Assembly (NCBI GenBank): GCA_002269645.1
Contig: NIVC01000085.1
Coordinates: 186,001-250,000, forward strand
Direction of reading: 5' to 3'
DNA length: 64,000 nucleotides
DNA from: Macrostomum lignano
Lineage: Eukaryota
Shown one piece after another: positions 23,563 through 64,000 of the stretch. Under the pieces are notes generated by a model. That model was not told the DNA's origin. It ran no database searches and saw only the letters and a list, made by a program, of their open reading frames with translations. A program made the position numbers and the translations under genes. Positions within the stretch are counted from its first letter, which is position 1. Each line of letters opens with the position of its first letter.

Positions 23563-23600
23563 TAAAAAACCCTACCCCAGTGTACACTGTCTTATCTCAC

Positions 23601-24389: not shown

Positions 24390-24459
24390 CTGCGGCGGAG
24401 AGCGGTTAGAAAGTGGCAAATTAGGGATTGTTTTTGGGTGATGCATGGCGGGATTCTGT

Positions 24460-35070: not shown

Positions 35071-35479
35071 TACCCTCTTTTTCCAATCATTGCAAACTGG
35101 AAAAAAGCTATAGCTAACACATTCCCTTTGGCATGATAGGAGTTTAGCCATAATGACCACACTTCCCTATCCCTATACACTTTATTCCCTCCAAACACTG
35201 CATGCTGCACACAACATCCCCCCACCTTGCATGCACATCTGCAGGAACTGTCAATTGTTAAAGCATGAATCTTATAGAGCATTATAATAGCCTCAATAAA
35301 TTATCCAATCCGTTAGATGGAGCTCTGCAGGTATAAAGCGCTATTGACGATTGAGAGAGAACAGGGAGTGTGGCCCGTTCACCTCATGTGACTGACTGCA
35401 TTGCTGTTTTCCTGCTCTATATTCCACAAAAAACTCCCCAACATCATCACATGTAGCAACTGTCCAAGCCAGATTCTCA

Positions 35480-41850: not shown

Positions 41851-42725
41851 TGGCGTGACACAGAGATGACCAGAGAATGACAGAAGGAAAGAACAGGCAA
41901 CGATAACTGCATCGAGTGATTGCCCAGAAAGGCTAAAGTGTCCCATGCGAAACAATTATTCACACCCTTCAATCGGTCAATCAGTTCTCTCAGCTCCAAA
42001 ACGGAGTTATATATATTTAAAGTGACTCAATAATGCCCCAGTCAGAACAGTTGGATATGACTGTTCTCACCTCAGATATCCAGTATTATCGCTGCGGGGG
42101 ACAAGTTCGAGTAAGCCGTCATTCCTTAGTCTCTAAGCCTCCCCTTATAGCCAAGCTTAGCTTGTCTCTCACGAGCCTCCCTCTGTGCAGAAAGCAGATT
42201 GAGAAGCTCCCCACTTCGGGATTAAGGAATATTAATCAGTCCTCCCCCCCAGACCCCACGAAATCAGCTCCACCATGCACCAAAATGAGTGACAGCCTGC
42301 ATATAACTGTCTATGATAAGCAGTTTGGAACCATATTTTTCCAACTCTTCTATCTAACGCAATATTAGACACGGATGCTTTCGATGAAGTCAGGAGAGGC
42401 TGAACGAAATTGGGTCATTCTGGATGCTGGACCCTGGCTGACCGGTTGAGACTGAGGGCGCGCTGAAGGAGATGAAGAGGGTAGGGGGGGCAGGACTCTC
42501 TGATCATCTCAGAGGATTCTGCCAGGCTGAAATGAAATCGCGAGTGGTGGGGATGGGTGACTCATTTCTGGTGTAACTCCCCATTTTGCTCTCCCTTCCT
42601 CCCTCGATTTGATTGCAGCGCCATCCCTTTGAAATTCTGAGCACTGGAATAAGATGAATGAACGAGTGGCACGTGAGGGAGTGGAATAGTTTACTGCTAG
42701 ATACGCAGTCTAAAGGGGGTGGTAC

Positions 42726-42728
<3 letters not shown>

Positions 42729-42764
<36 letters not shown>

Positions 42765-42769
42765 GGACT

Positions 42770-42808
<39 letters not shown>

Positions 42809-42878
42809 GGACTGACAGACAGACAGACAGACAGACAGACAGAAAGATAGACAGACAGAAAGACAGACAGACAGACAT

Positions 42879-42977
<99 letters not shown>

Positions 42978-42979
42978 GG

Positions 42980-43035
<56 letters not shown>

Positions 43036-43036
43036 A

Positions 43037-43127
<91 letters not shown>

Positions 43128-43128
43128 A

Positions 43129-43180
<52 letters not shown>
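42729..43180. repeat. (GACA)n microsatellite
   Basis: About 110 units with scattered point variants. Confidence 0.97.
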
Positions 43181-43181
<1 letters not shown>

Positions 43182-44739
43182 TAGCCACAGACAGTGAAAC
43201 AGATGAGAATGGAGCGCTGGTGCTCGAGTCCTAATGAGCACAACTTTAAAGATCGATAAAGTTTTTCACGCCCAGAAAAACTCCCCGACAAAATCATGCT
43301 TGGCCCCAGCCTTCGAGTTTTCGGAAATCGGATTAGCCATGAGGGGCCTCCACTGGCCACTCCCGTCTGGTTGGTCGCGGAGCATTCATAATTGCTCTAG
43401 AAAGGCCAGGCCGTCTTCTTCTCTTCAAGCCGAGAGCAGCTCCATAGATGAGTCGCGAGCATTTGGGATTTGGGATCCAAGATTTGGTCCTGCTGCAGGG
43501 ACTGAAAGGCGAAGAGTGAGTCAGAGAACCCAACGGACATCAGAAGCTATACGCGCATGTATTAAGAAAACAGTTTTTTTAGTTCAGTAATTAAGCAAAC
43601 TCTGCCGCCATCGATTTGTATCGGTGCTTGGGGAACAATTGAGAGCAGGCGGGCGCAGCGGTCCAGGACCCGGGAGCAAAGCGCTCTACTATTGTATACA
43701 TTTAGCCATGGAGACCGAATCAAACTAAAACTTGGAGAAATATAGGAGTAGGCCCTAGTGAATGATTTCAGTTCGTTATTGACCACGAAAACCGTGCATC
43801 TTCTTTCTGTACGTCGAAGGTTTGTTTGCATCACAGCGCCGCTTTCGATGTCCTATCTGGTAAAGTGTGAAAAATGTCGACTTTTTCAAAAATTGTGACA
43901 ACACCAGCTCACAGCATGTTGCTCAGAATGCAAAGATTTTTTATTCAAGTGTTGAAAATTTATTCAGCTTTAAGATGACACCAAGTTTACAAAAATCGGT
44001 TTTACCAAAATGAAGTTATGATAAATTTTGTGAAATATGACGAAGCGACTTGACTATCTTTTGTGTGTAAACGACAGCTGCTGTTACTCCAACTGCTGGT
44101 TCTGGACCTCCTTGATATTGCTAACGACTTTTCGCCTTTCTATTTTCTATTCTCATTTTTTTCTACTTTTCTTTATTCTTCTCCGACTGCTGCTCCCGAG
44201 AGCTTCCTTCCTTCCTCTCTCTCTCCTCCTCTCAGCTTTGCCTCTCTTTCATTCTTCAGTCGGCTTCCTCTCAGAAATTTTCTCCTGCGTTACTCACTCT
44301 TTCACTCGCTCTGAACTTACTTTTATTTTCTCACTGGGCTACTCACGCAGACTTTCGCTCCTATATAGGTTTCATTGAATTTCTTATATGTACGCGACTG
44401 TTTTGAGTCAGCGGTTATAAACTTGATTGGGGGGTTGGGGTTTATTGGAGTGGTTTTTTGAAGTTACTGCATTGTGACAAAAATGCTGTGCGGTTTTCTA
44501 ATCTCAGGTTTGAGCTCACTTTCGCGCTAGCGGATCAATAATAATTAATCTATAATACTATCTGTGACCACTGAGGAGGATCTCTTTTGGAGCGATCAGA
44601 TATTCGTAGGACTGCTGGGGTATTGACTTAAAGAGGTACTACGGTATTTAGTGAGCCCAGTTATCGAAGTAATCCAGGAGGGGTGGCATGGGTATCTACA
44701 TGTGGGCGTATCTAAACAGGTTTCAGGTACTCATAGATC

Positions 44740-47810: not shown

Positions 47811-47924
47811 AAAGTGCTCTGAAAGCTTTCGCTAATGCATTTTTGCAGCAAAATGCATGCAGTCTCAAGTGAAATCGACAGTTCTTGTGTAATACAGTAT
47901 GTAGAATTTAGTAGTCCATGGTCT

Positions 47925-48047
47925 CTACGCCAACTGCTCCACCGCTTCGTCCATGACCAGACTGACCAGCGCGTTGGCCACGGAGTGCATCATGTCGCTG
48001 GATTCTCTGTAGCTCAGCTGGGCCTCCTGACCGGAGAAGTCCAGGCC
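47925..48047 (-). CDS. HEATR4: HEAT repeat-containing protein 4, exon 11 (last)
   Basis: Acceptor CCGCAG|GGC, phase 0. GLDFSGQEAQLSY...VEQLA then TAG. Non-conserved tail, so based on splice logic. Confidence 0.65.
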   Translation of the reverse strand, partial: GLDFSGQEAQLSYRESSDMMHSVANALVSLVMDEAVEQLA

Positions 48048-48109
48048 CTGCGGAACATTTGTTTGATTGTTGAATTTGATGTTGTTTTCTGCAGTTTCTG
48101 TAGGTACTT

Positions 48110-48600
48110 GCGGTGGTACTGGGGTGGTACTGGGGTGGCACTGGGGTGGTACTGAGGTGGCACTGGGGTGGTACTGAGGTGGTACTGGGGTGGTACTGGA
48201 GTGGTACTGGGGTGGTACTGAGGTGGTACTGGGGTGGTACTGGGGTGGTACTGGGGTGGTACTGGGGTGGTACTGGGGTGGTACTGGGGTGGTACTGGGG
48301 TGGTACTGGGGTGGTACTGGGGTGGTACTGAGGTGGCACTGGGGTGGTACTGAAGTGGTACTGGGGTGGTACTGGGGTGGTACTGGGGTGGTACTGGGGT
48401 GGTACTGGGGTGGTACTGGGGTGGTACTGGGGTGGTACTGAGGTGGTACTGAGGTGGTACTGGGGTGGTACTGAGGTGGTGCTGGGGTGGTACTGAGGTG
48501 GTACTGGGGTGGTACTGGGGTGGTACTGAGGTGGTACTGGGGTGGTACTGGGGTGGTACTGAGGTGGTACTGAGGTGGTACTGGGGTGGTACGGGGTGGT
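48110..48600. repeat. 11-bp minisatellite (GGGGTGGTACT) in HEATR4 intron 10
   Basis: About 44 copies. Confidence 0.97.
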
Positions 48601-48656
48601 ACCGGTTCATGCAACTGTCACGGGCTGGTTGTCACACTGAAGCCAAGGCTGCTCAC

Positions 48657-48930
48657 CTGAACAGCGGCCACCCTGTCGATTTCGTCACGCCTCTCCGGCT
48701 GCAGGAAGCCCTCCAGCTCCGCGGCCCGCTGTTCGCCAATCTCCTGACCGGCCCAGCGCGCCCGCTGATCCTTGAGCGCCTCGGCCGGCAGCGACAGCTT
48801 GGAGCGCGCCGACTTGGCGGCTTCGTCGTCGGCCGAGGCGGAGCGGTGGCGCCGAGCTGACTGCTCGATTTCGTCGCGAAGCGAGATGGAGCCGCCGCCA
48901 GCATCCGAGCCGGAGGGCGAGTGGCGACGG
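48657..48930 (-). CDS. HEATR4: HEATR4 exon 10
   Basis: Acceptor CCGCAG|C (phase 2) and donor CAG|GTGAGC (phase 0). Phases match both neighbours. Confidence 0.72.
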
Positions 48931-48959
48931 CTGCGGAGAATGGCGAATCGGAAGCAAAC

Positions 48960-49193
48960 GCGGCTATAGCAATACTCGTTGCTATGGTAACACCCGGCGC
49001 TAAGAAAACACTCGTTGCTAGGGTAAGACTCGTTGCTAGGGTAAGACTCGTTGCTAAGAGACCACTCTTTGCTAGGGTAACGCTCGTTGCTAAGAGAACA
49101 CTCGTTGCTATGATAACACAGAAAGCTATGAGAGGACTCGTAGCTATCGTAACACAGAAAGCTATGAGAAAACTCGTTGCTATGGTAACACAA
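48960..49193. promoter_or_regulatory. 18-bp minisatellite made of RFX X-box-like motifs in HEATR4 intron 9
   Basis: GTTGCTATGGTAAC at 48978 and 49176, GTTGCTATGATAAC at 49104 (all fit GTHNYY-AT-RRNAAC). The other units are degenerate X-boxes on the same 18-bp register. The repeat is certain; the regulatory role is inferred. Confidence 0.55.
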
Positions 49194-49340
49194 AGTGATG
49201 GCAACACCCATTGTAATACAGGCAGCACCCGATTTTAAGAAAACAACCGTTGCAATCAAAGCACGGACGCTATGGTAAACAGACAGACTTGTATCTTTCT
49301 AACCTGTGCTTACCATGCTAATATCCCCTACCGCACTCAC

Positions 49341-50095
49341 CCAGGTGTGGCAGCCGGCGTTGCCAGCAGTGACGATCGTTTCGACTTCGACGTCACCTGA
49401 GAGGTGGCCGGTCGCGAAGCAAAGTCGGCCGGCGACAATTCCGAGTCCTCCGGGATCAGCGAGAGACGGCCCTCGGCACCCCGCTCCAAGTCCTCCTCTT
49501 CCTCCGCTTCCCCATCGAGTTCCTCTTCCTCATCCTCGTCAAAGTCGCTCTCTTCTTCTTCTTCTTCTTCCTCCTCTGCGTCATCGTCCTGCTCCTCAAT
49601 GATGTCCCTATCCTGGCTGTCAGCCAGCAGCTCGCGGCTGAACTGCACCGTACTTGAAGGAGCCTCGGTGGGCTCAACCTCCGTCTGCTGCTGCTGCTGA
49701 ATCGGCGGCAGTGGACTGGGCGACTTCGGAATCATGCGCTGGTGCAAATCGGAAAATTCCTCAGCACGCTCGGCTTCCATCACCTCGCGACAGATTCGAC
49801 CTTTCTCGTCCAGCTTACGAACGGCCTCTTTAATCTGGGCGACCGTATCGCCGTCGGCAGTCGGCGACAGGCCCATCGCTTGTAGGCCGAGCCGGAGCTG
49901 CTCGAGCACTAGCGGCGACTTCTCCACTAGGAGGCGGTCGCGCAGCGCCTGTTTGGCTGGTTCGTCCCGCAACCGCAGCTGCAGGGCGATGGTGCGGACG
50001 GCGGTGGCCCGGACTCGCTCCTCTGGCTCGAACCGGGCTGCCCACAGCAGCGTCTCTGCGACGTCGGTGCTGACCAAGCCGATGAGGCCGATGGC
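49341..50095 (-). CDS. HEATR4: HEATR4 exon 9 (last HEAT repeats plus acidic tract)
   Basis: AIGLIGLVSTDVAETLLWAARFEPEERVR. Acceptor TGCAG|GCC, donor GG|GTGAGT (phase 2). Confidence 0.88.
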
Positions 50096-50748
50096 CTGCA
50101 AGGTGTGGAACATTTTTTGCATGCACTCGATTTCTAATTGGACGTCAATATAATCTCTTCTTCTTAAGGAAAGTACGTGTAGAATACAAGTGGATGGACG
50201 CCCTGCACTAATTTCGACAAAATTGTATCACAATCCCCTTCAAAGTATTAATGAGACTTTGGAGTTGGACCGACTGCGTTACACATCCGGGTACATGGGC
50301 GTAAGGGGATGTGAGACAAATAGCGTCGGGGGGGGGGGGGGGTTGTATCAAACGTTTTATAGACAGACGATTTCTACCTCGACGAAATGGAGGCTAACCT
50401 GACGTTTTTAGATATAATGGTCAAAGTTTCTAATCTCCCTCACAACCATTTCTACTCATAGAAATCCCCAAAATGCTAAAATGGTCGGGTTTTAGACATA
50501 ACGAGAGCTTTTAGATTTTTACTTTAAGTTCACATCCATCCCTAGAAACTATTTTGCTAACGAAACCTAATGGCCTAAACTTGGAGGGAGGGTGGCAGGG
50601 CAGCTCAATGATAAACACGTCACGACCCCTGCTTCGATTCTGTGAGCAGCCGCATTATGTGACGCAGTTTCCGTCAACGCTGGTTGCGAGACGATGTGGC
50701 CGAAGGCGTTGCGTCAGGATGCTTACAAGAACACCTGTGCAAACTCAC

Positions 50749-51066
50749 CTGGATTGCTCTAGCTTTCACCTTCCACCAGGGGTCGTGAGCGGCCAGTCGG
50801 AGCAGGCCTCGCACGCACTGCTCGTCCCGAATGCGCAGACGGCTGCAGGCAACGCAGGCGGCGATACGGACGGAGGCGTACTGGTCGTCGAAGCAGGCCA
50901 GGAAGGCCGGCATCAGTCGTCCGGTCATCACGCCGAGCAGGCCGAGCTTCTCAACAGCATCGGCGCGGATTCGTTCGCCGGATTCGCGAAGTCGACGAAG
51001 AATATCGTCGTGGACGTCTTTTCCGTGTCCTGTCTGGCCGAGAGCTTTGGCCGCCGAGCGACGTAC
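50749..51066 (-). CDS. HEATR4: HEATR4 exon 8 (HEAT repeats)
   Basis: VRRSAAKALGQ...FLACFDDQYASVRIAAC...HDPWWKVKARAIQ, matching my recollection of human HEATR4 (VRRAAAQALGQ, FLHCFSDDFTAVRRAAC, DPYWKIKAFAI). Phase 0 at both ends. Confidence 0.92.
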
Positions 51067-51404
51067 CTGAGCGAAATTGGTCGGACTGGCATTGTAAAGG
51101 CGTTGTCTGCTTTTCTGTAATCTATAGGCCCTTGAAGTGACCATCAACATCAACGTGATTATTTGTTAAATAGTTTTTCCTAGTCATATGAAGTAAATAG
51201 TAAGGTTTCTCAGCCCGTATGTACTTTTATTCAACTTTCTCAGAGAGTGTTCGGCTTCAATTTGGTGGTCATAGAAAGAGTTCGGCTTTAAATTGACAAT
51301 AAAAAATTGGCTTCTGAAGATCACGGATGCTTTTGATCTTCAAAAGTCATTTGGGGTCCTATTTAGTTCGAGTCCAGTTCATTCAATTTCCCCAAATTCC
51401 TCAC

Positions 51405-51809
51405 CGCCTTATGCGAATCGTTCCACATCAGGTGGCTCAGCTTCTGAGCCAGGTCGCGATTAAGCGAACCATTCAGAGTAGGCAGAGTCTTGCAGACGAT
51501 CACCCTGCGACGCCAGCTCGGACTGTTGAGCTGTTCAGCCAGCAGGCCGTGAACCAGTGGCGTGTGCTGACTCAGGCTGGCCAGCAGCTGGGTGGTCACG
51601 TGATGTCGCAGCGTGTCCTCATTAGTCATGAGCTCGTGCACCAGCGCCCCAATGACGTCGCTGTCAAAAGCGCCCTGACCGGCGAGGCACTGGACGGCGG
51701 CCCAGCGATCGTCGCCGCTGCCGTTCACGAGGCAGTCGCGTAGGAGGGCCTCGGCTCGCGGCGTGGGCTTGTTGGTCTGGTACAGGCAGATTGCGGCGGC
51801 GTACCGCAC
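51405..51809 (-). CDS. HEATR4: HEATR4 exon 7 (HEAT repeats)
   Basis: VRYAAAICLY...DRWAAVQCLA...QKLSHLMWNDSHKA. 135 codons, phase 0 at both ends. Confidence 0.92.
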
Positions 51810-52055
51810 CTGGGCAGGTATGAGTTTTTAATACTCGACTGTTAGGAGGAATGATAGACACTAATTGTACTGTAGGCTGTCAATTAAGACGAACCTAAAC
51901 CTTTCTACGGTGCTTTGACACTCATCTTAATTATCATCGCTATATTGTCTGTTATTGTCTGCTCGTGCAATTAACACCCTTGAGGGCCAACCCCTAAGGA
52001 ACAGCGAAGTGTACATGCCTAACGATAAATTGCCTGCCTCAGGGGAGTCAGCGGA

Positions 52056-52109
52056 ATGGCAGTGGTGCCTCTCGCCAGTTGTGTGACAATGTTGTCGAAT
52101 AAAGTGCAT
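52056..52109 (+). mobile_element. Truncated copy of the SINE body seen at 62585-62783
   Basis: ATGGCAGTGGTGCCTCTCGCCAGTTGTGTG...AAAGTGCA matches the reverse complement of 62590-62640. Confidence 0.55.
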
Positions 52110-52124
52110 CTCCCAGGCTCTCAC

Positions 52125-52384
52125 CTGCGCATGCTGATCGTCCAGCAGCAGCTCCAGGGCAGTCATCAACGACTGCGGCAGCTGACTGGAGGTGGCTGAC
52201 TCAGCTGACTCGTCAAAATGAATCGCGTCATCGGCTTCGGCCACGTATCGCTGGGCGTGGGCGCAGGTGAGCACCGCCTGCAGTCGGATTGTCGGATGAA
52301 CGTCGACCATGTCGCGCAGAAGGTCCTCCACGGTGCAGTCGCCGTAGCGACTGTTCAAATGCCATTTGCGGCGCCATTCGTCCA
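52125..52384 (-). CDS. HEATR4: HEATR4 exon 6
   Basis: Acceptor TCGCAG|TG (phase 1). VDEWRRKW...TVEDLLRDMVDVHPTIRLQAVLTCA...LELLLDDQHAQ. Donor CAG|GTGAGA. Confidence 0.9.
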
Positions 52385-53073
52385 CTGCGAGTGCAATTGG
52401 AGAGAAACATTGATTTGCGCCTGGTTGGTTCGCTTTCTGCATCATACTACTTATACTGTATTCCTGCACCATTTGGAAATATTGAAAGTTATGAGAATTC
52501 AATTGTGGACAATTTATTCTGCTTTTGACTGAATTGAGTCATGTTCCATTCCGAATATTTAAAAAAATTAGACCACATTAAGATCGTAAGTGGCTAAAGA
52601 AGTTACATTGTACACCTAAAGGATGGAGCAGCTGGGGGTGGCTTGGCTGCTCAAGATGAGGGCAGCCAAGCTCCACAGCTTCCACATTGAGCTGGAAGCC
52701 CCTCGAGCTTCGGGCCGAACCCCCATCCTCAATGCCCTCTGGGATGGCATGAGGCGTCGGGAAAGAAACAGGGGATTCCCACCCTAGGGTTAGGCTGGCC
52801 ACCAGCCTCCCAGATCTGAAGTGACAACACGCTGAGATGCACTAAATAAAACTAAGCTCGATGCCTGAGACAGAGATCGGTTGATAAGTCACTAGGACTG
52901 ACTGTCTAATTTCTGATCTCCTCATTGCTTATTTCTACACTTTTTTCCAACTGTGCTTTTACCTAACTGTTTTACAAATATTCCTAATTGCTTTTTTACA
53001 CCTTTACTATTCATACTGTTTTTACTAAATTGCCTCTCTTTTTATTTCAATAGGCCTTCAAATATTCTTGCAC

Positions 53074-53718
53074 GTATTTTCTTAGATTACCTATTTTTTA
53101 TGAGATTCCCTCTTTGTGCGGGATTTCTCTCCCCTCCCTTTTATCCCCAAACGCGTGCAAAATGCTGCAAAATATTGAAAAATAGTTTTATTTATTTTTA
53201 TTTCGACATAAATATAAATATTACCGTCGAAATCTGTACTAAATATTCTTTCGATCAAATAAAACAGTAATATTGCGGTAGAGTTCCCTGGAACTTTACT
53301 ACGGCACCTCGTTTTAATAAAAATGAATGAAGGCGGTGTGGCATTTTACAAGTGGATTTAATTTTTTAATTGATTAGTACCCTCTTCTTGGAAGAGGGTT
53401 TCACAAATCATGGAACACTCATTGAATGTTCCTCTCCACGGAAATCTTTGTTGTTAAAACGAGGTGCCGTCGAAACCGGCGCGGGTCAGTTCCGAAGAAC
53501 TCTGCCGCAGTTATATTTTGTATTTGATCGAAAGAATTAAAAATATTTACAAGATTTCGATTTGAATATTTAATACGAATATTGAAATTAAAAATATACA
53601 TATATAAAACTATTTTTCAATACTCTGCAGCATTTTGCACGCATTTGGGGATAAAAAAGAGGGGAGGGAAATCCCACACAAAGAAGGGATCTAATAAAAA
53701 CAGGACATCTAAAAATAC
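53074..53718. repeat. Long imperfect inverted repeat (foldback/MITE-like) in HEATR4 intron 5
   Basis: Arms about 53074-53317 and 53454-53718 are reverse complements over about 240 bp (e.g. TTATCCCCAAAYGCGTGCAAAATGCTGCA; ACGGCACCTCGTTTTAA / TTAAAACGAGGTGCCGT), with a loop of about 136 bp. Confidence 0.88.
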
Positions 53719-54806
53719 TTTTAGTAAAATACTTTTAGTAAATACTTTTAGAAATCTTTAGTAAAAGGCGAAAGATTTAATCGTGGAATGAAGAGAAACC
53801 AGAGTTACTGATTGTGGGTGAAAAGCCTTTGTATATAATACTAAGCTGTGGTTGTGCCTACTAAAAACCTCGTTTTCGTAACAGCACTAAAAGAAACATT
53901 TCAGGCGTTTATTATTGTATAAAATTTATACAATTTAATTTAGTTAATTCAAGAATTAAGCTTTTTGTGTTTTAAAACTTTTTAATGAAGTCCAAATCAC
54001 TTATAACCTCTGAAACAAAGCTACTTCAGTAGTAGGACACACAACCTAACTTTATACTACTTACCTTAGGTACATGAGTAGAACTAATTGCGCATCAAGT
54101 ACCAAAACTTAAATAAATAGACAATAAATATGCATTTAGCTACGAAAATCAAATTTTAATTAAGGTCTGACGAAATCTCATACAAAATTAGCAAAACTTA
54201 TTATTAACCTATAAAAAAGTAAAATAATGACGGCTTGACAGCGATAGTCAATAGTCTAGGTGTTGTATACATGAAAGCATGCCCCAAATACATTAGTATT
54301 TAAATCGTTGGCCATTCAAAACCTCTACAATGAAACATCTCTGGAAATTCAAATTGAAATTTCGATTTGATATGCTCTTCTTTACTAGATATGTTAACAA
54401 GCATTCTAGAAAGTTAAAAAAGGTTTACATCTTCCGAGATCATTGGCCAAGCATTCAGCAGCGAATAAATATCAGGTAATGCTACAGGGATGGATCTTGG
54501 GATATATAAAATTGATAAAAGCAAAGCGAATAAATTTGATTTTTATGAGATCTCACGAATTCCCACTGGCGATTTTGGCCTGTCGTCTGTTTCGTCTGAA
54601 AAATCGCAGTTTTGCTCGAATGGCTTAATTATTTTGTTCGAGTAGCATTGCAGTGGATTCACATCCTTTCGAGGCAAGAAGAATAGAAATAGCAAAAAAC
54701 GCTGTTTCATCTACTGACAGTAGACGCAACGGTTATTATTAACTGGAGCTCTTTATTATGGAAAAAAAAGAATTAGCAAATGTTTTCAATGCAAAAAAAG
54801 ACTCAC

Positions 54807-54918
54807 CAACATTGTGCAGATGTTCGTCATTTCGCTTTCGCTTGCTGCTCTCTAGCCGTCTGCGCTGTTCCTCATAGTCCTCTACCTCGCTTCCCAGCTT
54901 GTTCAGGTGCTGAGTAGG
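54807..54918 (-). CDS. HEATR4: HEATR4 exon 5 (112 bp); not in the ORF track
   Basis: Acceptor TTTCAG|CCT, donor G|GTGAGT. PTQHLNKLGSEVEDYEEQRRRLESSKRKRNDEHLHNV. Phases 0 and 1 bridge exons 4 and 6. Confidence 0.85.
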
Positions 54919-55871
54919 CTGAAATATAGGATATACACAAGTATATGTATAGCTGGGTAAAGAATTACAACGCCATTATTGAAAGGTATAAACTTAATAA
55001 ACGAAAATAGTTTACGAAGCATCGACTTGACACAAACCGAAATCCACAAATATTTAATACGAGTTCTTGCAAAAATAATTAGCTAAGCACAAATACTGAT
55101 ATGGAAGCATACACCACTTGTAGACATATTTTCAGATTCAGACGTTTTTAAGTTATTAGTTTGCTTCAAAATTATCAACTTAAACATTCATCGGTGCTTA
55201 ATAATGCTTGGTTTACCTGTCAGTTTGAACTGTATTTCCAGCAGCCATTTTCAAAAGTTAAAAACACAAATTCATTATAAAATGATTTTATGGTTACTTG
55301 GTAGTTATAAAATAGGTCAATCAACACAAGGTGAGGTTCAGTTTTATTAGTTATAACCAAGATGAGCATCAAATTTTACAGGTACAGCAATATCGTAGAA
55401 CCTTTTTATACATGAACATAATCCATTTAACTATTACTTTATATGTGCAAGGTCGAGCTTAATTGTGACACAACACAGCGACAATTACAGCTAATTACCT
55501 TTCCTCTGGAACCTTTAATTTGATTGTCCTGAAAATCATAATTTTCATTGATGGTGTTAAGCATTCATACACTCGTATATTACAAGATGATTTCATTTTT
55601 AAGCGCCATTGCATTTATTAAAGTAATACTACTACTAACACATGCAACTGTAAGTAGGCTATAAATAATGTTAATTTAACATTTAACACGATATGAAAAA
55701 GGTACGTGCAAAAATTAGTTTCTATCAAGAATAAATGTTAATTCAATTGCTGCAATAAAATGATTTATTTAGTCCAGGTGCGAATATTCAGTTGCTATGG
55801 TGCATGATTGTTAATATGCGCGAACTGCAATTCAACTTTTATAGTAAAGTTACTTTTCGATACATATCGGC

Positions 55872-55930
55872 TCTATCTATCTATAGTTTCTGTCTGTCCG
55901 TCTGTCTGAACGCTGTCTCTAGTCTAAACA
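55872..55930 (+). mobile_element. Possible Helitron-like element 5' end
   Basis: TCTATCTAT...TCTGTCTGTCCGTCTGTCTGAACGC layout, similar to 3843 and 61861. Confidence 0.25.
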
Positions 55931-55984
55931 ACTTGAATTCAGTGATAATTTTTAATGCATTTAACTAGGATCACTTAGACTTAC

Positions 55985-56292
55985 ATCCTGCGCCAAAGGT
56001 AGTCCAATCCACTTTCTCATTCCTCGTTTCGGTTTGGCACCATCGCCCTGTTCGTCTGGAACCTGTGGAGCCAACTGCAGGGTGTAGCGATTGTAGTTCT
56101 GCAGTAGCAGCTCCTTCTGGTTGCCTGGCTGGTGCACCAGCTTCACTCCAGACAGCCGCTCCCTCTCATAGTCATTGTCGGTAGTGTAGCATTTGTCACC
56201 GACTCGAGGATTCATCGAGTCTTTTAGCTGCGGCAGAGGCGACTTTGCTGGCAATTCAGAACTGATGGCGGCTGCCGTGCTGTTGCCGTGGT
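55985..56292 (-). CDS. HEATR4: HEATR4 exon 4
   Basis: NPRVGDKCYTTDNDYERE...LLLQNYNRY...KWIGLP, matching recalled human PRAGKFAYSTDNTFEQE...LENLNRY...RWTALP. Phases 1 and 0. Confidence 0.88.
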
Positions 56293-56484
56293 CTGCGGGA
56301 ATGGGAGCGTTTTATAAACTCAACATTTCACATCATCGAGAGAGCCGAACATCTATGATCTACACTGAAGACCATTGTTGGTTACTAAGTCGCTTCATGA
56401 TGCGCCTGATTTAAAATATATTCCCTAAAACAACTTGTAACGCTATGGACTTGGGGCTTTACAGGGGGCTTTGCAACCAGAGGC

Positions 56485-57150
56485 TTTAGGAAAGAAGAGA
56501 GGAGAGGAGAGAAAGGAGAGGAGAGAGTAGAGATGAGGGAAGAGAGAGAGGAAAGAAGACAAGAGACGAGAAAGGAGAAAGGAGAGAGGAGAAACGAGAG
56601 AGGAGAGGAGAGATGAAATGAGAGAAAACAAAGAGGAGAGTTAAGGAGGAGAGGAAGGAGGAGAGGAAATTAAGAGATGAGAGAGAATAGAATAGAGAAG
56701 AGGGAGTAGAGAGAAGAGAAGAGAGGAGAGAGAAGAGAGGAGAGAGAAGAGAGGAGAGAGAAGAGAGGAGAGAGAAGAGAGGAGAGAGAAGAGAGGAGAG
56801 AGAAGAGAGGAGAGAGAAGAGAGGAGAGAGAAGAGAAGAGAGGAGAGGGAGTAGAGAGAAGAGAAGAGAGGAGAGGGAAGAGAGGAGAGAGAAGAGAGGA
56901 GAGAGAAGAGAGGAGAGAGAAGAGAGGAGAGAGAAGAGAGGAGAGAGAAGAGAGGAGAGATGAAATGAGAGAAAAGAGAGGGAGAGGAGAGAGGAGAGAG
57001 AAGAGAGGAGACGATAAATAAGAGAATAGAGATGAGAGAAGAGAGAGGAGAGGAGAGAAGAGATGAGAGCGAAGAGAGAAGAGAGGAAGAGAGAATAGTT
57101 GAGAGAAGAGAAAAGAGAGGAGAGAAGAAAGAGAAGAGAGGAGAGATGAG
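56485..57150. repeat. GA-rich microsatellite (GAGGAGAGAAGA) in HEATR4 intron 3
   Basis: Direct inspection. Confidence 0.95.
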
Positions 57151-57450
57151 CATGAGTATGACTTCAGATTTTGGATTGCAATTGATAACCAACATGGAGG
57201 GTGAGGGCTGCATTTTGGGGATGCAGCAGCTTATCAATTTTTTAAATGAATCTCTTGCAAATTGGTGACAGCCAACTGGAGTTCAGTCCCAAGGATGATC
57301 GCTGCGGTACAATCGTAACTTTTGTGCAGGAGCTCAAGGCTTTCCTAAACCTATCGCACAAATTTTCTGATATTGAGAGAAGATTAGAATTGAGCTTGTT
57401 AAACCATAAAAGCAGAAACATACGGTATAAAGATCATTTCACATGCTCAC

Positions 57451-57779
57451 CATCGCTAACAGCCTGATCCTCTTTGACCCGCTTCCTGGATCCCAACGGC
57501 AGTCGGTAGAACGCAGCCCGGTTAGCTTCTCCATAAGGATCCGTGTCCGCGACCGCCTCGCCAGCCGCCTCCCTGCTTCTCTCGTCATCCAGCAGGCGCA
57601 GGAACGGCGAAGACAAACGAAAAGCGTTGGAATTCGGCCGATTGCGTCGCAGCTTGCGTCTGGCCTCGTCAGCTGTGGCCTCCAGCAGATAATGATCGGG
57701 CGACGGTACCGGTGGGTACTCGGTGAGGTCCGGACGGTCGGGCACGAGGTCCACCAGGTCAGGTGGCGCCTGCCCGTAC
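57451..57779 (-). CDS. HEATR4: HEATR4 exon 3
   Basis: Acceptor CAACAG|G, donor G|GTGAGC. ...ANRAAFYRLPLG... Phases 2 and 1 are consistent. Confidence 0.82.
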
Positions 57780-58217
57780 CTGTTGGTGAGGATTGATATA
57801 GAATCATGACGATGATTTGATCAATTTGCTTTAGTGATATCGGTGTGTTTTATCGAGAATTGCTCTCGTCGCTTCGTAGAAGGCAAGTAAACTGTAGTGC
57901 ATGATAAGTTCGATCAGAAATTCACAAGCTCGAAATTTCACAAGCACAGCCACCCTAGTGGAACCAAGGACCACTAGAAGTTACTAGCATGGGGAATCGA
58001 ATCAAGGATCGCGGTGCCACAGTCGGAAGCGTTTTCCCGTTGAGCTGCAGGACTCAAACTTGTAGGACACGTGCTTTGAAAGTGTCCATGTATTATGTAC
58101 ATGTAGATACAAAATACCTTCCAATCCTAAGGCATTTTTAGATGTCCATGGACCCCGCCGGAACGTGCAACTATTCTTTCCAATCTTAGAGGCACATAAT
58201 TTTGGCAGCCAACTCAC

Positions 58218-58514
58218 CATCGCTTCAATCGATCAACGTACGCCCTCCTATCCACCGGATTGTGCACCGCTTCCCTAGCAACATAAGCGGCCGTGTTGGG
58301 ATGCAGTTGGCGCAGCACGTAATCGTCCCAATCGTAGCCTGCGGTGTCCATTCCGGACACCCTGCCGGAGCCGTCAGCTGCCTCGGTGGCCGCCTTCGTT
58401 GCTGTTGTCGCTCGACTGTCAGCCTTCGCTGGAACGCCTTCGGTGAGGAAAATTCCGCCTGAGGAGCTCTTCTGAGTTTGTTGCTGTTGTTGTTGCTGCT
58501 GATTGGCTGGGGAT
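58218..58514 (-). CDS. HEATR4: HEATR4 exon 2
   Basis: Acceptor AAGCAG|A, donor TG|GTGAGT. WDDYVLRQLHPNTAAYVA resembles recalled human WEATVLEKLNERTARWI. Confidence 0.85.
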
Positions 58515-59213
58515 CTGCTTTTGACAGAATTTTTTAGGACCAAAATTTTATTAGATAACTTGCTAATAAGTTGTTCAGACACTATTAATTTAAGTTGGTC
58601 AGGAGTTACAATAATGGCCAATGGGATTATAAAATGAATTTATCAACTCACATGGCTTCTATACGTAACAAGAAGTCTGCGATAAAAAGAGAGGATTCTT
58701 GAGGAATAGTAGTTTAGTTCTATAGCCATGTGTCTCTCTCTGCCTCCATTCGCTCTGATTGGTTCGGTGGGTCAGGCTGGGTCCCCCCCAATTGGTTTTC
58801 TTCTCTGCCCCATCCCCCACCGGCGGCGGCTCGTGATTGGCTGGCCGGTGGAGTGAGGGTGACGCGACTGTCCGTTGGCTGCCTGTCCCCCTGTCCCTCC
58901 CCCACCCCAAGCTGGTTGCACAGCTCCAATAGGCTGTCCCAGTAGGGTAACAGCATTATAAGTATGACTCAGACATTCAGGATGGGATTTTCAAGGAATA
59001 TTGCGGAATAATTCGGGAATGGGATATGGAGGAGAGGGAGAGCTAAGAGAGTATGTTTCAATAGTTTTTTGATCTACATGTCATAGATCTTAAATATTTA
59101 GGAAAACTGGAATTTAAGGGGTGGAGTTCGATAGAGAACGTCAGCATAAAGTTCATGATAAGGAATTTAGGACACAGCGTACTTTCTGAGCATGATGCTG
59201 AGATAAAACTCAC

Positions 59214-59779
59214 CTTGTGGAAGCACGCTGCGCTGGCGCAGTCAGGGGTTCAAGTCGACGGCCCTCTTTCTCTTTTTGTCGGAGCTGAGGCCAGCGGAAG
59301 TTCGGACCTTTGTGACCGCAGCGCAGGCCGAAGTGCTGCTGCTGCTGCTCGGCTCGGGCGGCCCGCCGGTGCGGCAGTACCGAGCCAGGCGAGTACACAT
59401 CAGCAAACAGCGCGTCCGAGTACGGCAGCGTGTGCGAGCAGCGCTCCTTGACGACGCTCTCGTCGAATTTTAAATCGGCTGATACGGCACCCAGCACGCG
59501 GGATTGACGGAGTCTTCGGCTAGGCGGACTCGAGGCACGAACATCTCGGAGGTGGCCGCCTGATTGCTCTGACGATGTGCCCGCTGTTGATACTGCTGAT
59601 GCTGCTGTCGACGTCGGCCTGCCGAATCCGCTGGCGCGGAGGTGCCCATGCTCAGGGATGTTACCTGCACTCGACTTGCCACAGCATGCAAAGAGGACTG
59701 TCTCAGGGGCTGCGCGGGTGGCGGTGGTCCCTTCGGCGCCGGCTGCTGATGCTGTTGAATAGCTGCAGCTGACATCATT
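59214..59779 (-). CDS. HEATR4: HEATR4 exon 1 (start frame unresolved)
   Basis: Conserved VLGAVSADLKFDESVVKER...LPYS. Donor AG|GTGAGT (phase 2), acceptor TTCAG| at 59780. The conserved frame is open from the acceptor but has no ATG; the ATGATG at 59778 is in another frame that stops at 59470. Confidence 0.7.
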
Positions 59780-60681
59780 CTGAAGTTATAGTTTTTATAG
59801 TAAAAAAGCGCCTTCAAAAGACAAATCTAAATACGTTTTTTCAGCAAACATTTTGCACCATTATTTTTATGTAATTTTAGCTGTATTTACTTCTTTATTA
59901 ATTAATTCATTAGAAGTAGTGTTCCGTTATTGTTCCCCATGTTAAAAAGTAAGAACTTAATAAGTCTCTCAATAATTGCTAAAAATTTAAGTCGAAACTA
60001 AATAGAATTTAAGTATCAAACATAAATAACATCTAAAAGAATCTAGAATTTGTTGACACAAAACATATTTGAGTTAATCTGTGCCTATGCTATATATTGA
60101 AAGCAAGAGCTAGCTTTAAAAATACATAGAATCATAGATCATACATATATTGAAATTAGCCTTTAGGATAAATATCAACAATCGCTCAGATCTCAACATT
60201 GGCTTTTTATGATAGATTACAGTCCCAAATCAGCACTTCTAAAAGCACTTATTTTTTAGTAAGATTTTTTAACTGAAAAAAAGCAGAAATTCAAAGCTGT
60301 AATTCATCAGCTGACTTGAGAACTAGAGCTTTTTCTTTTTGTTTGGACTAAAATATGATTTACGGTTATTTCTGTTGTTTAAGCCTATCCAATGTTTTAC
60401 TTTAACTGTCTCTCCACAGACTAGACTGTTTTAAATCATGGAAATTAGTGTAAAGCTTGTATTAAAAAGAAACTTTTATTGCGAAGTTAATTAAGACAAG
60501 TGTTTACTCTAGAGACATTTTAATTTTTATAATAAACATTTTTTTCTAATGCAAAAAGTATTTTAAAATCTTTCGCACAAATCAGTTATAATTAATTGTA
60601 TATTATTGTAACTACTTAGTACTTTTTGTTGAAACCTTTAGAAGCACTATAACAAAAAACTAATTTTTAAACGCAAAACAC

Positions 60682-60878
60682 CTACACGGAATTCTGCTGC
60701 ATGTCGAGCGGCTGCTGCTCGTAAGATAGCTCTCCTTAACTTCGTCTCTCGGATCGCCTGCTGGGCCTACCTTTCTTCGGCTGGTGTGTTCTCTCCCGAT
60801 TTCTAATCGTTGTTGCATAGATATTAAAGAACATTCTGATTTCTTAGCAGCTTCTGTTTGTGCATAAATGCACATCAC
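60682..60878 (-). other. Candidate upstream (5' UTR or coding) exon of HEATR4
   Basis: GC-richer island in AT-rich DNA. The weak donor TAG|GTGTTT would join in phase 2 to the ATGATG frame of exon 1. Confidence 0.25.
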
Positions 60879-61860
60879 ATGCGCTGCAAACTGTTACTGT
60901 TTTTAACCTTTTATCTGGGGCCTATTATCTATTTAGATAGGCCTACTACTGCTAAATGCTACTGCTTACTTTAGTATTTATGCAGCAGGCCTAATTAGTT
61001 TCTTCTAACTCTATATAAGGACAAAAAAGCAACATGTACCCCCGTCTGTAGGCCTACCTTAATTCAATTAATAATTGGTCATTGACTGACTCTACTCTAT
61101 GCCATGTATTGTAATAACAGTCTATGGTCTATGGACTAAAGTTCTGCAGGACTACAGCTATAGGCTCCTACAGCTAATATTCACCATTCACCTAGCATGT
61201 AGCCATTGGCTGTGAGTGACCTTTTTAAGAAGAGGCCTCTTTCTCACATAGGAGGCATGTAATCTACTAGGCCTAGGCCTAGTGCAGCAAATATAACAAA
61301 TCTCATGTTGTGCCTTTAGTTTTAAAAAATGATGCACCTAAAATTTTTGCTTCTTGCAAATCATAGGTTGTGATTTAAGATGTGATACTAAATATAAAAC
61401 CCTATTAAAATAAGTATAGAAAACCTACAAACAAGCAATACAATGTCTAAAATTGTTGCCTAAAAATGCATTGTGACACAGAATATATTAGGGTTAGGCC
61501 TAACTTTTGCACCAAATACAGATGTAGTACTAATTAGATAATGGGGCATTTAGCCTTAATAAGATAGTCATAGTTACATTTGCTTATTATTGCCATTTAC
61601 CCTAAAATTGCACTACATACATTGCTATATTATCTACTTTTATTCTAGCCCCAATGCAACACCAAAAAATTCCAAAATTGCAATGGATGGGCAGATGCCT
61701 TTTGTCCACTTATTCCAATAAAGTGTATAAATGAAGCTTTGCTTTAATTGAGTTAAATAAATATCTTCAAGTCTTAATCATATCTTATAATGTATTATCA
61801 ACAAAGTATTGAAGCTTAAAAATATAAAAAAATTAATATTATCCAACTGTTACACTATAG

Positions 61861-61950
61861 TCTATATTAAATCAATAAGATCTGTCTGTCTCTGTCTAGT
61901 ATTTCAGTTTACAGCCTGAGTGCCTTGATCCATTTTGCGGATGGTGGGAT
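61861..61950 (+). mobile_element. Possible Helitron-like element 5' end
   Basis: TCTATATTAAA...TCTGTCTGTCTCTGTC...GATCCATTTT layout. Confidence 0.25.
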
Positions 61951-62584
61951 ATACGCTGGAAAATTCCGGCATACACTTGATTTCCGTGGCGTACACCAGC
62001 ATACATTTCTTGGCTGTGTACAGTGTGGTGTATGGCAACTGGCGTAGATATATATATAAAGATTTTTTTGTGCTTTTTCTGTGTTAAGTTATTTCAAAAA
62101 CTATTTTCTCATTTACTAATCATTTTAATTACCGGAATTGTCACAACAATTGTCATGTTATCAATTTTTTGTAGTTTAAATTTGAATTTAAATATTCGTT
62201 GATTTTTTTGACCATTTTTATTAAAAATGGCATACATTTAAAATCTGTTGGCATACCATTGAAAATTCAATAAAAATATGTCCGGCGTACACAGAAAACC
62301 TTTTGCAATATGGGCCTTGATCAATATGAAGTAATATATTAAAAGTTAATATAAAATCTATTTTATATTCCTAAATATTTTTTTAATATTGAATATACTT
62401 GAATTTTTTATAAAAGATATCAATTTCTTTATTATTTGTCTGATTTTATTATGTGTTAGTAAGACATATTTTTACTCAGGCAAATAATATTATTGAAATA
62501 GAATTTAAATCTAAAAAATTAATATAAAATCTCAATAGAGTCCTAATTTCTTAATTTTTTTAGAGACAAGGGGGTTATATGCAC

Positions 62585-62783
62585 CCTGGTGCACTTTAAG
62601 CAACATAGGCACACAACCGGCGAGAGGCATTACTGCATATTCTGCCGACTAATTGCCATTAATTGCACAAGCAAAGCCAAGCCGAGATTCCAATTCAGCC
62701 TCAAATTAATGACTGCACTTGGAATCAAGCCTGGGTTGCTGGCATACCAGAGCAGCTGCGTTACTGCTGGGCTACAGCCCTCC
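62585..62783 (-). mobile_element. tRNA-derived SINE
   Basis: Minus-strand head GGGCTGTAGCCCAGCAGTAA (A-box-like) ... CCAGGCTTGATTCC (B-box-like), followed by a non-tRNA body that also occurs at 52056-52109. Confidence 0.6.
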
Positions 62784-64000
62784 TAATTGCCTGGTATTAA
62801 AAAGCATAAGAACCAAAAGCATATATACCCTTTCCTCTAGCCTAGAAATAGAATAATAAATATCTGTGATACAAATATTTTAATAATATTTTTTTATTAA
62901 TAATAGCATTACATTATAGTTCTTATTTATAGTCTATCAGTAGTATTAACATTTTTAATCTAAACAAATTTTGCACCTTAATCTTCAAATCTTAGGCCTA
63001 GTTTGAAATAAAATGATAAATATTACTTGGAAACCTTATGACTATTAAAAAAACAGAATGTATTTTATTTGCTAATCTGATTAATATAAAAGTTAGAAGT
63101 GGCTATTAAAGATATTGTTTTCACTTTGTATTTGTATCTTATTATATTGATAAAAACATTTTCCTATGCAGATATCTTGGCTATTTTTGTAGAAGACTAG
63201 TATAAAATTACCAAAAAGGTTTGTGCATTATTTAAAATATTGTTTTTTTCCATTTCCTAGGTTGAAAAGTAACATATGATGACAAAAATTGGGACACCTT
63301 TTGATTTAAATTGATACTAACAACAAGTTACCTTTATCTGAATACATCTATATCTTTTTTGAAGCTATTGCTTATTTCAATATTAAGTCAATAAACATTA
63401 TTAAATTTATTTTTTCGCATTTCCAGATAAATATCCAATGAAGAAAATCTTGTCATCAATGATGATTATAATAAAGTGGTAAGTTCAATGACTCCAATTA
63501 ATTATCATTGTTTAAAAAATTAACTTTTTGAATTAGTTATATAGATTTATTCTTACATGATGACAATATACTCTTGGGACACCTCTGAGTCTAAATTACC
63601 ATGACTTCACTTTAACCAGTTACCTTTTGCTGATTTTACATTTGTACATTAGTAGTTTAACTATATCTGTGTATGCTTAAATTACAAAAAGTTATTGCCT
63701 ACTTGTTTTAGAATCATCAATGAATATTGGTCCTGGAATATAGGCCATGTAAATTGATATTTGGTAAGCTATGCTGTTCTTTTTCAAAGACTTAAAGCAG
63801 TTAATTTGAAATTTATAATAGGGCTTTTTACAGTTCTAACATAGTTTGAAATATAGCAATGGGATTATGGGAAGTTACATTATGCATATGTTTTAGAAAA
63901 TATATCGATAATAGGTGCCGGAACAGAAACACACAAGTTTTTTTCCATGTGCATTATGCATCATATATACACAAAGTTGGAGATTACACTGGTTATTCTA

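What the first reader, a model, noticed from the sequence alone, without database searches (positions are those of the whole stretch)
59214..59781. HEATR4 conserved frame has no AUG: spliced-leader AUG start, or a 1-bp assembly error
Seen: after the acceptor TTCAG| (59780) the frame carrying the conserved VSADLKFDESVV block is open for all 566 nt to the phase-2 donor (NDVSCSYSTASAAG...SRRLRQSRVLGAVSADLKF), yet it has no ATG. The ATGATG 1 nt after the acceptor opens a different frame of about 102 codons (MMSAAAIQQHQQP...SEMFVPRVRLAEDSVNPACWVPYQPI*). Established: flatworm spliced leaders end in AUG, which can act as the initiator codon. Inference: SL-AUG joined at this acceptor gives an intact protein and turns the Q-rich frame into an overlapping out-of-frame uORF. 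Alternative: one C is missing at 59518-59519 (GCC[C]GA), giving MFVPRVRLARRLRQSRVL; the Q-rich frame does look protein-like. A phase-0 upstream cis exon would also work.
Basis: partly seen in the sequence, partly recalled or inferred. Interest (0 to 1): 0.7.

Follow-up and report, generated by a model that had tools for sequence, protein, structure and literature searches.

The report
One-base gap, not spliced-leader start
The flatworm HEATR4 gene seems to lack a start codon only because this copy has one C too few in a short run of Cs; two sister copies in the same genome assembly have the extra C and start normally at the ATGATG, so no spliced-leader start codon is needed.

Summary
On the minus strand, exon 1 (59779-59214) has a fully open frame with no ATG that carries the conserved HEATR4 block. 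A 102-codon ATGATG frame overlaps it.

The window is Macrostomum lignano assembly Mlig_3_7, contig NIVC01000085.1, locus Mlig000186.g4. GenBank already lists its protein as 5'-partial.

Two paralogous loci in the same assembly, g1 and g3, have CCCC where the window has CCC (59502-59500). With four Cs the ATGATG frame runs straight into the conserved block (…MFVPRVRLAEDSVNP|RVLGAVSADLKF…), giving a 1244-aa HEATR4 in g3.

g1 is identical to the window for about 1.2 kb around exon 1 except for that one C. A codon-usage model trained on other exons of the window independently prefers the ATGATG frame upstream of the C run by 20 nats. It switches frame at about 59540-59510.

So the Q-rich frame is the real N-terminus, not a uORF, and the SL-AUG start is unnecessary.

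The tools cannot say whether the missing C is an uncorrected PacBio homopolymer error (my preference) or a real frameshift in a redundant paralog. Interest is low.

The parts
47925..59779 (-). HEATR4 orthologue, locus Mlig000186.g4 of M. lignano Mlig_3_7. There are about 12 coding exons and the stop codon ends at 47925.
   Evidence: tblastn of PAA91479.1 (P0281) against the window gives 11 collinear exon matches at 92.5-100% identity; a short stretch (residues 497-505, DNQIKGSRGK) matched nowhere, so a further micro-exon is inferred. Pfam HEAT_2/HEAT hits. Best named relatives are HEATR4 of Patella, Crassostrea, Saccoglossus, Branchiostoma and Lates.
59214..59779 (-).
59500..59502 (-). C homopolymer, CCC here and CCCC in paralogs g1 and g3. 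This is the site of the 1-nt deficit that separates the ATGATG frame from the conserved frame.
   Evidence: Three-way alignment. It is the only difference between g4 and g1 from 60247 to 59011.
59773..59778 (-). ATGATG, the annotated start of the paralog proteins. P0131 starts MMSAAA... and P0282 starts MSAAA.... ATG#2 has A at -3.
59503..59778 (-). Q-rich N-terminal coding segment in frame 2 (MMSAAAIQQHQQ...MFVPRVRLAEDSVNP). In this copy it runs on to TAA at 59472-59470.
   Evidence: Identical to the g1 protein N-terminus. The codon model prefers frame 2 over frame 1 by 20.2 nats, or 7.4 nats without Gln codons. There is a weak match of LRQSSLHAVASRVQV to the HEATR4 N-terminal motif LFPCAAKVKIPQIG: 4.9 bits, reached by 1 of 500 shuffles.
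59354..59506 (-). Conserved HEATR4 N-terminal block in frame 1 (...RVLGAVSADLKFDESVVKERCSHTLPYSDALF...).
   Evidence: HMM of seven invertebrate HEATR4 N-termini: 42.8 bits, E = 2.5e-15.
59780..59785 (-). CTTCAG, a candidate SL trans-splice acceptor. It fits the published M. lignano motif [T/C]TNCAG. It is present in g4 and g1, but g3 has CTTATG there.
   Evidence: Whether it is used was not testable.
59769..59770 (-). A second AG (gtcAG|CTGCAG). The GenBank 5'-partial CDS of this locus begins at 59767, so the annotated transcript begins at 59767-59769.
   Evidence: P0281 starts CSYSTASAAG. Locus start context. Recorded gene ranges end at the stop codon (L001, L003) or at the last coded residue (L002, no stop), so they are CDS ranges.
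59792..59799 (-). TATAAAAA, 21 nt upstream of ATG#1 and conserved in all three copies. It may be a core promoter element or an AT-rich chance match.
   Evidence: Function is inferred only.
59542..59544 (-). Internal frame-2 ATG (MFVPRV...), conserved in all copies. It is an alternative start if the mRNA 5' end lies downstream of ATGATG.
   Evidence: The other internal frame-2 ATG (59649-59647) is ATC in g3.

Best explanation
The HEATR4 reading frame normally starts at the genomic ATGATG (59778-59773) and runs through a Q-rich N-terminal extension into the conserved block. In this copy (Mlig000186.g4) a four-C run is recorded as three Cs (59502-59500). That throws the start and the N-terminal 92 codons out of frame with the rest of the protein and creates the illusion of a conserved frame with no AUG. 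No spliced-leader AUG, upstream exon or unusual initiation is required.

I think the missing C is most likely an uncorrected long-read homopolymer error in a multi-copy region of the Canu plus Pilon assembly.

Shown: the paralogs have CCCC and intact ORFs, and the frame switches at the C run.
Inferred: the CCC is an assembly error rather than a real mutation.
For: 1. P0131 (PAA86491.1, g3, 1244 aa) and P0282 (PAA90838.1, g1) begin M(M)SAAAIQQ...SEMFVPRVRLAEDSVNPRVLGAVSADLKF.... That is window frame 2 joined to window frame 1 exactly at the C run.
2. The DNA alignment of the three loci shows one gap column, CCC against CCCC. g1 is otherwise identical to the window over the 550 nt aligned and from 60247 to 59011.
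3. A codon-usage model trained on other exons of this window picks the right frame in 94-97% of leave-one-out windows of 90-150 nt. It gives frame 2 a posterior of 0.94-1.0 for the windows starting at 59629-59554 and frame 1 from about 59524 on. Over 59779-59504, frame 2 beats frame 1 by 20.2 nats, or 7.4 nats after removing Gln codons.
4. The rest of the g4 CDS is intact, and pN/pS against g3 is 0.18 over about 970 codons. This copy has therefore been under constraint.
5. Mlig_3_7 was built from PacBio reads with Canu 1.4 and polished only with Pilon using short reads (PMC5730564). Short reads carrying CCCC would map preferentially to g1 or g3, starving this site of corrective evidence (inference). 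Four of the ten g4-g1 differences between 62566 and 58903, the nearly identical stretch around exon 1, are 1-nt homopolymer length differences.
6. GC content jumps from 0.25 to 0.55 right at the ATGATG.
Against: - No raw reads were available, so CCC at this locus could be real.
- Over 15 kb, the ratio of 1-nt indels to substitutions between g4 and g1 (19:196) is not clearly above natural divergence. Most homopolymer indels lie in runs of 5 or more; this is the only one in a run of 4.
- Frame 1 staying open for 92 codons upstream has P of about 0.03-0.04 by chance.
- An SL AUG joined at the consensus acceptor CTTCAG would be in that frame.
- g3 has a genomic ATG in frame 1 exactly at that position.
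- Between g3 and g4 the four substitutions in the N-terminal segment are 1 synonymous and 3 non-synonymous in frame 2. This shows no constraint on the extension, though the numbers are too small to weigh.
- The annotated transcript of g4 starts at 59767-59769, downstream of ATGATG. The true mRNA 5' end, and so which frame-2 AUG is used, is unsettled.
Confidence: 0.6

Rival explanations
1. The CCC is real. This paralog carries a recent 1-nt deletion and is a null or decaying copy in a recently duplicated genome. Translation from ATGATG ends after 102 codons. The open upstream frame 1 is a coincidence.
For: M. lignano DV1 carries extra copies of its large chromosome, and three or more HEATR4 copies are assembled (PMC10468722), so loss of one copy would be tolerated. 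g4 differs from g1 and g3 by true substitutions elsewhere, so it is a distinct locus. The overall ratio of 1-nt indels to substitutions is compatible with natural variation, and a run of four is short for a consensus error.
Against: The remaining 1160 or so codons of g4 are free of stops and frameshifts. pN/pS is 0.18-0.26, so any inactivation must be very recent. It is the only difference from g1 in about 1.2 kb. The assembly method is prone to this exact error.
Confidence: 0.28
2. One reading: the CCC is real, the pre-mRNA is trans-spliced at CTTCAG|A (59780|59779), and the terminal AUG of the spliced leader starts translation in frame 1. This would rescue a full-length HEATR4 with a different 93-residue N-terminus.
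For: The M. lignano SL ends in ATG, and 30-39% of genes are trans-spliced at a [T/C]TNCAG motif, which this site matches. The SL AUG would be in frame 1, which is open to the conserved block. Use of the SL AUG is documented in S. mansoni. g3 has a genomic ATG at the equivalent position. The VLFAC peptide in frame 1 weakly resembles the HEATR4 N-terminal motif: 0.9 bits, reached by 3 of 500 shuffles.
Against: Codon usage rejects frame 1 upstream of 59504 by 20 nats. In g1 and g3 the same frame ends in a stop after 127 codons, so it cannot be the ancestral coding frame. The frame-2 peptide matches the N-terminal motif better, at 4.9 bits. In S. mansoni the SL AUG is in frame in only 28% of trans-spliced mRNAs, which is about chance. 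The annotated g4 transcript begins at 59767-59769, not 59779. There is no direct evidence that SL is added here.
Confidence: 0.05
3. A small GC-rich intron inside exon 1, or an upstream phase-0 coding exon, restores the frame in cis.
For: 131 GT...AG pairs of length 2 mod 3 would join frame 2 to frame 1 without a stop.
Against: Among the listed pairs (the output was truncated) none had both a good donor and a pyrimidine-rich acceptor. The one good donor (CAG|GTAACA, 59664) pairs only with poor acceptors. The real introns of this gene are AT-rich and 0.3 kb or longer. No upstream ATG exon with a good phase-0 donor exists in 59780-64000. The paralog proteins are collinear with unspliced exon 1.
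Confidence: 0.02
4. Non-AUG initiation in frame 1, or programmed +1 ribosomal frameshifting at the C run.
For: Nothing specific. Both frames overlap in an open state for about 30 nt around the C run.
Against: Paralogs with CCCC need neither mechanism. No known shift motif or stimulatory structure was looked for or seen. Codon usage rejects frame 1 upstream.
Confidence: 0.01

Closest known systems
Residual homopolymer indel errors in long-read (PacBio CLR, Canu) assemblies that short-read polishing fails to fix in multi-copy regions
   Same: A 1-nt length difference in a mononucleotide run. Near-identical paralogous contigs carry the intact length. The gene model becomes 'partial' or frameshifted. 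The assembly was made with Canu 1.4 plus Pilon.
   Different: The run is only 3-4 nt long. Raw reads were not inspected, so the error is inferred and not shown.
Flatworm mRNAs that use the 3'-terminal AUG of the spliced leader as initiator (Cheng et al. 2006, J Biol Chem 281:733; 'slORFs', PMC9851317)
   Same: The species has an SL ending in AUG. A consensus trans-splice acceptor sits 1 nt before the ATGATG. The SL AUG would be in frame with the conserved frame in this copy.
   Different: The gene family has its own genomic start codon, and paralogs do not need the SL AUG. The frame the SL AUG would open lacks coding signature and ends in a stop in the paralogs. SL addition at this site is unproven.
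HEATR4 (HEAT repeat-containing protein 4) of metazoans
   Same: HEAT repeats in the C-terminal half. 35-39% identity over about 450 residues to mollusc, hemichordate and amphioxus HEATR4. Conserved N-terminal block ISxDLxFSEDVV...LPY.
   Different: M. lignano has a Q-rich N-terminal extension of about 90 residues. The LFPCAAKVKIPQIG motif is only weakly recognisable.

Membership tests
SL-AUG-initiated flatworm mRNA | The organism's spliced leader ends in AUG | tested here: met
   The M. lignano SL is CGGTCTCTTACTGCGAAGACTCAATTTATTGCATG (PMC8629364). The window is M. lignano.
SL-AUG-initiated flatworm mRNA | The SL is actually joined at this acceptor (SL-containing cDNA or reads) | not testable with these tools
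   No RNA-seq data could be reached. The acceptor fits the [T/C]TNCAG motif. The annotated transcript of this locus begins 10-12 nt further downstream.
SL-AUG-initiated flatworm mRNA | The SL AUG is in frame with the conserved ORF | tested here: inconclusive
   Met in this copy. Not met in paralogs g1 and g3, where that frame stops after 127 codons.
SL-AUG-initiated flatworm mRNA | The ORF has no usable genomic AUG, so the protein requires the SL AUG | tested here: not met
   In the paralogs the genomic ATGATG opens the full 1244-aa ORF. Codon usage supports that frame in the window too.
Assembly homopolymer indel | The difference lies in a mononucleotide run, and near-identical copies have the other length | tested here: met
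   CCC against CCCC at 59502-59500. g1 is identical for about 1.2 kb around it.
Assembly homopolymer indel | Raw reads at this locus disagree with the consensus | not testable with these tools
HEATR4 | HEAT repeat domain, with best matches to proteins named HEATR4 | tested here: met
   Pfam HEAT_2 and HEAT hits. phmmer E-values of 1e-116 to 1e-152 against Patella, Crassostrea, Saccoglossus and Branchiostoma HEATR4.
HEATR4 | Conserved N-terminal block ISxDLxFSEDVV...LPY | tested here: met
   N-terminal HMM: 42.8 bits, E = 2.5e-15.

The most novel reading that the evidence does not exclude
The CCC is a real frameshift in this paralog, and the spliced leader's terminal AUG, joined at CTTCAG|A, happens to open the one frame that reads through to the conserved HEATR4 body. 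Trans-splicing would then rescue a frameshifted gene copy with a new N-terminus. The genomic ATG at the same position in paralog g3 would be a related trace of this frame being used.
Probability: 0.04. Interest if true: 0.55.

Novelty: not a real feature. Interest (0 to 1): 0.12.

Why it matters
It matters mainly as a caution. A conserved reading frame with no AUG next to a trans-splice acceptor in a flatworm looks like a textbook case of SL-donated initiation. Here it dissolves once paralogous copies are compared: it comes down to one base in a C run.

The practical consequence is for annotation. PAA91479.1 (Mlig000186.g4) is listed as 5'-partial with a wrong N-terminal 93 residues. The correct N-terminus is the one given for g3 and g1.

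If the base is truly missing, the locus is simply an inactivated duplicate. Only the low-probability rescue scenario would be of wider interest.

Tried and rejected
1. A protein word-index search with a chimeric N-terminal query found nothing. The HEAT-domain query found only fish HEATR4. These searches missed the same-species proteins, which the exhaustive phmmer search later found.
2. Exact-ORF look-ups of the window's frame-2 ORF (102 aa and 115 aa versions) and of the frame-1 GTG ORF in public assemblies found nothing on record. There is therefore no independent sample showing the CCC version, but absence is uninformative.
4. Frame-restoring mini-introns: 131 GT...AG pairs were enumerated, none in the listed (truncated) output with credible signals.
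5. A scan for an upstream ATG-containing exon with a good phase-0 donor in 59780-64000 found none.
6. The SL sequence itself is not in the window. Rfam found only a U5 snRNA.
7. Supplement searches for 'Mlig000186', looking for trans-splicing flags, found nothing held.
8. ML2-based UniProt fragments of this gene start at exon 2, so they say nothing about exon 1.
9. BLASTP of the N-terminus against Lates HEATR4 was not significant. The HMM of invertebrate N-termini was needed.
10. Synonymous versus non-synonymous counts in the 276-nt N-terminal segment rest on only four substitutions and are uninformative.

Full report
**Observation.** The gene lies on the minus strand.
- The acceptor ttcAG ends at 59780 and exon 1 runs 59779-59214 (566 nt). 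The donor is AAG|GTGAGT, in phase 2.
- The frame starting at 59779 (frame 1) has 188 codons, no stop and no ATG. It contains ...SRRLRQSRVLGAVSADLKFDESVV....
- The frame starting at ATGATG (59778, frame 2) gives MMSAAAIQQHQQP...VPYQPI*, 102 codons, with TAA at 59472-59470.
- The third frame has stops.

**What and whose gene.**
- Downstream exons carry Pfam HEAT_2 and HEAT repeats.
- An exhaustive phmmer search gave E-values of 1e-116 to 1e-152 against proteins named HEATR4 in Patella, Crassostrea, Saccoglossus and Branchiostoma. The word-index search found Lates HEATR4.
- An HMM of seven invertebrate HEATR4 N-termini matches frame 1 residues 92-142 (42.8 bits, E = 2.5e-15). The 'conserved block' is therefore genuine.
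- A DNPEP exon elsewhere in the window is 95% identical to a Macrostomum lignano UniProt entry.
- The window matches M. lignano Mlig_3_7 (GCA_002269645.1) contig NIVC01000085.1 exactly over the 801 nt tested.
- The locus is Mlig000186.g4. Its GenBank protein PAA91479.1 (P0281) is flagged 'partial' and begins CSYSTASAAG..., which is frame 1 from 59767. The annotators met the same problem.

**The decisive comparison.** The same assembly holds at least two more copies.
- g3 is PAA86491.1 (P0131), 1244 aa, on contig NIVC01000278.1.
- g1 is PAA90838.1 (P0282), on contig NIVC01000103.1.
- Their proteins begin M(M)SAAAIQQHQQP...SEMFVPRVRLAEDSVNPRVLGAVSADLKFDESVV.... That is window frame 2 joined to window frame 1.
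- The DNA alignment shows why. At AAT CCC GCG (window 59502-59500) both paralogs have four Cs.
- g1 is otherwise identical to the window across the 550 nt aligned. From 60247 to 59011 the missing C is the only difference. g3 differs by about 2%.

With CCCC the ATGATG frame reads straight into HEATR4. With CCC it stops after 102 codons and the conserved frame is left without a start.

**Independent support from the window itself.** I trained a codon table on 1464 codons of other exons in the window: HEATR4 exons 2-9, DNPEP and an LRR gene.
- In leave-one-out tests it picks the right frame in 94-97% of 90-150-nt windows.
- Along exon 1 it gives frame 2 a posterior of 0.94-1.0 for the windows starting at 59629-59554 and frame 1 from about 59524 on. 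The switch falls at about 59540-59510.
- Over the whole upstream part (59779-59504), frame 2 beats frame 1 by 20.2 nats. With all Gln codons removed it still wins by 7.4 nats.
- The first 130 nt are less decisive between frames 2 and 3, but frame 3 has stops and frame 1 is always the worst.
- GC content jumps from 0.25 to 0.55 exactly at the ATGATG.
- Frame 2 residues 25-39 (LRQSSLHAVASRVQV) weakly match the HEATR4 N-terminal motif LFPCAAKVKIPQIG (4.9 bits, reached by 1 of 500 shuffles). The overlapping frame 1 peptide VLFAC scores 0.9 bits (3 of 500).

- The Q-rich frame is the real N-terminus, not a uORF.
- The SL-AUG is not needed.
The site is 59502-59500, not 59518-59519, and the junction peptide is ...RVRLAEDSVNPRVLG....
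- No upstream ATG exon with a good phase-0 donor exists in 59780-64000.
- Among the 131 GT...AG pairs that could restore the frame, none in the listed (truncated) output has credible splice signals.

**Is trans-splicing still possible here?** Yes, but it is beside the point.
- The M. lignano SL ends in ATG. 30-39% of genes are trans-spliced at a [T/C]TNCAG motif, which CTTCAG (59785-59780) fits (PMC8629364; PMC5730564).
- In S. mansoni the SL AUG is in frame in only 28% of trans-spliced mRNAs, which is about chance, and more than 40 cDNAs need it (Cheng 2006, cited in PMC9851317).
- In the CCCC copies an SL AUG joined at 59779 would open a 127-codon out-of-frame ORF.
- The g4 transcript as annotated begins at 59767-59769, just after a second AG.
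- g1 and g3 CDSs start at ATG#2 and ATG#1 respectively.
- A TATAAAAA sits 21 nt before ATG#1.

I could not determine the true 5' end. If it lies downstream of ATGATG, the conserved frame-2 ATG at 59544 (MFVPRV...) would be the start, and it still needs the fourth C.

**Error or real mutation?** This was not testable here.

For an assembly error:
- The assembly was built with Canu 1.4 on PacBio CLR reads and polished only with Pilon on short reads.
- In a region where copies are identical, short reads carrying CCCC map better to g1 or g3 (inference).
- Four of the ten g4-g1 differences between 62566 and 58903, around exon 1, are 1-nt homopolymer changes.
- The rest of the CDS is intact, with pN/pS of 0.18-0.26.

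For a real frameshift:
- The gene is present in three or more copies in a genome with duplicated chromosomes.
- Over 15 kb the ratio of 1-nt indels to substitutions (19:196) is ordinary.
- This is the only indel in a run as short as four.

I put the odds at about 2:1 for an assembly error.

**Unexplained.** In g3 the acceptor CAG is replaced by ATG (cttATGaATGATG). That is a genomic ATG in frame 1 exactly where the SL's AUG would sit. In g3 that ORF ends after 127 codons. It may be a tandem double substitution. It may also be an artefact of polishing the assembly with RNA-seq reads that kept the SL's last three bases; if so, it would indirectly indicate trans-splicing at this site. I could not test this.

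**Verdict.** This is an ordinary gene with an ordinary start codon, broken in this copy by one base in a C run. The SL-AUG reading survives only as a roughly 4-5% 'rescue of a real frameshift' scenario.

Noticed in passing
L001 5996-5998 (g3), equivalent to window 59782-59780: Paralog g3 has ATG where the window and g1 have the acceptor CAG. This gives cttATGaATGATG, a genomic ATG in frame 1 at the exact position an SL-derived AUG would occupy. It could be a tandem double substitution or an artefact of RNA-seq-based polishing.
   Followed up: partly
window 53687-53807 (-): A U5 spliceosomal snRNA gene (Rfam RF00020, 40.7 bits, full length) lies inside a HEATR4 intron on the same strand as the gene.
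   Followed up: no
L002 against L003/L001; switch near window 57870: Copy g1 is a mosaic. It is nearly identical to g4 (the window) from about 62570 to 57870, then carries g3-type substitutions downstream. This suggests recombination or gene conversion between copies, or a chimeric contig.
   Followed up: partly
window 47911-48631 (-): A minisatellite (period not measured; peptide repeat about 11 residues, PVPPQYHPSTT...) is open in all three frames. It lies in the last HEATR4 intron, between exons at 48929-48657 and 48050-47925. Many other mini- and microsatellites fill the window, for example at 34000-35100, 41000-43400 and 56400-57280.
   Followed up: no
window 26274-27316 (+): A mariner/Tc1-like transposase remnant, with ORFs of 318 aa and 105 aa in two overlapping frames. 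It is probably a frameshifted dead copy.
   Followed up: no
window 1389-5130 (+), with a possible further exon at 12787-12894: An aspartyl aminopeptidase (DNPEP) gene. The older ML2-based UniProt model A0A1I8FAD9 shows local patches that look like compensating frameshifts (EEIAARR-RAAGS against EEIGSESAQGAGS). At those patches the window sequence agrees with other species.
   Followed up: partly
window 20824-24578 (-): A leucine-rich-repeat protein gene with a probable transmembrane segment, three exons or more. It was used only as codon-model training data.
   Followed up: no
window 58514-58519 (-) and between 55985 and 54921: A NAGNAG acceptor at exon 2: g4 and g1 proteins read RASTRSPANQ, g3 reads RASTGSPANQ. 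The g4 protein alone has an extra nine residues, DNQIKGSRGK, which points to an alternative micro-exon or splice site.
   Followed up: no
tool behaviour: The word-index protein search missed three 99-100% identical M. lignano GenBank proteins. The exhaustive phmmer search found them at once. A negative result from the first tool is not evidence of absence for eukaryotic genes.
   Followed up: yes
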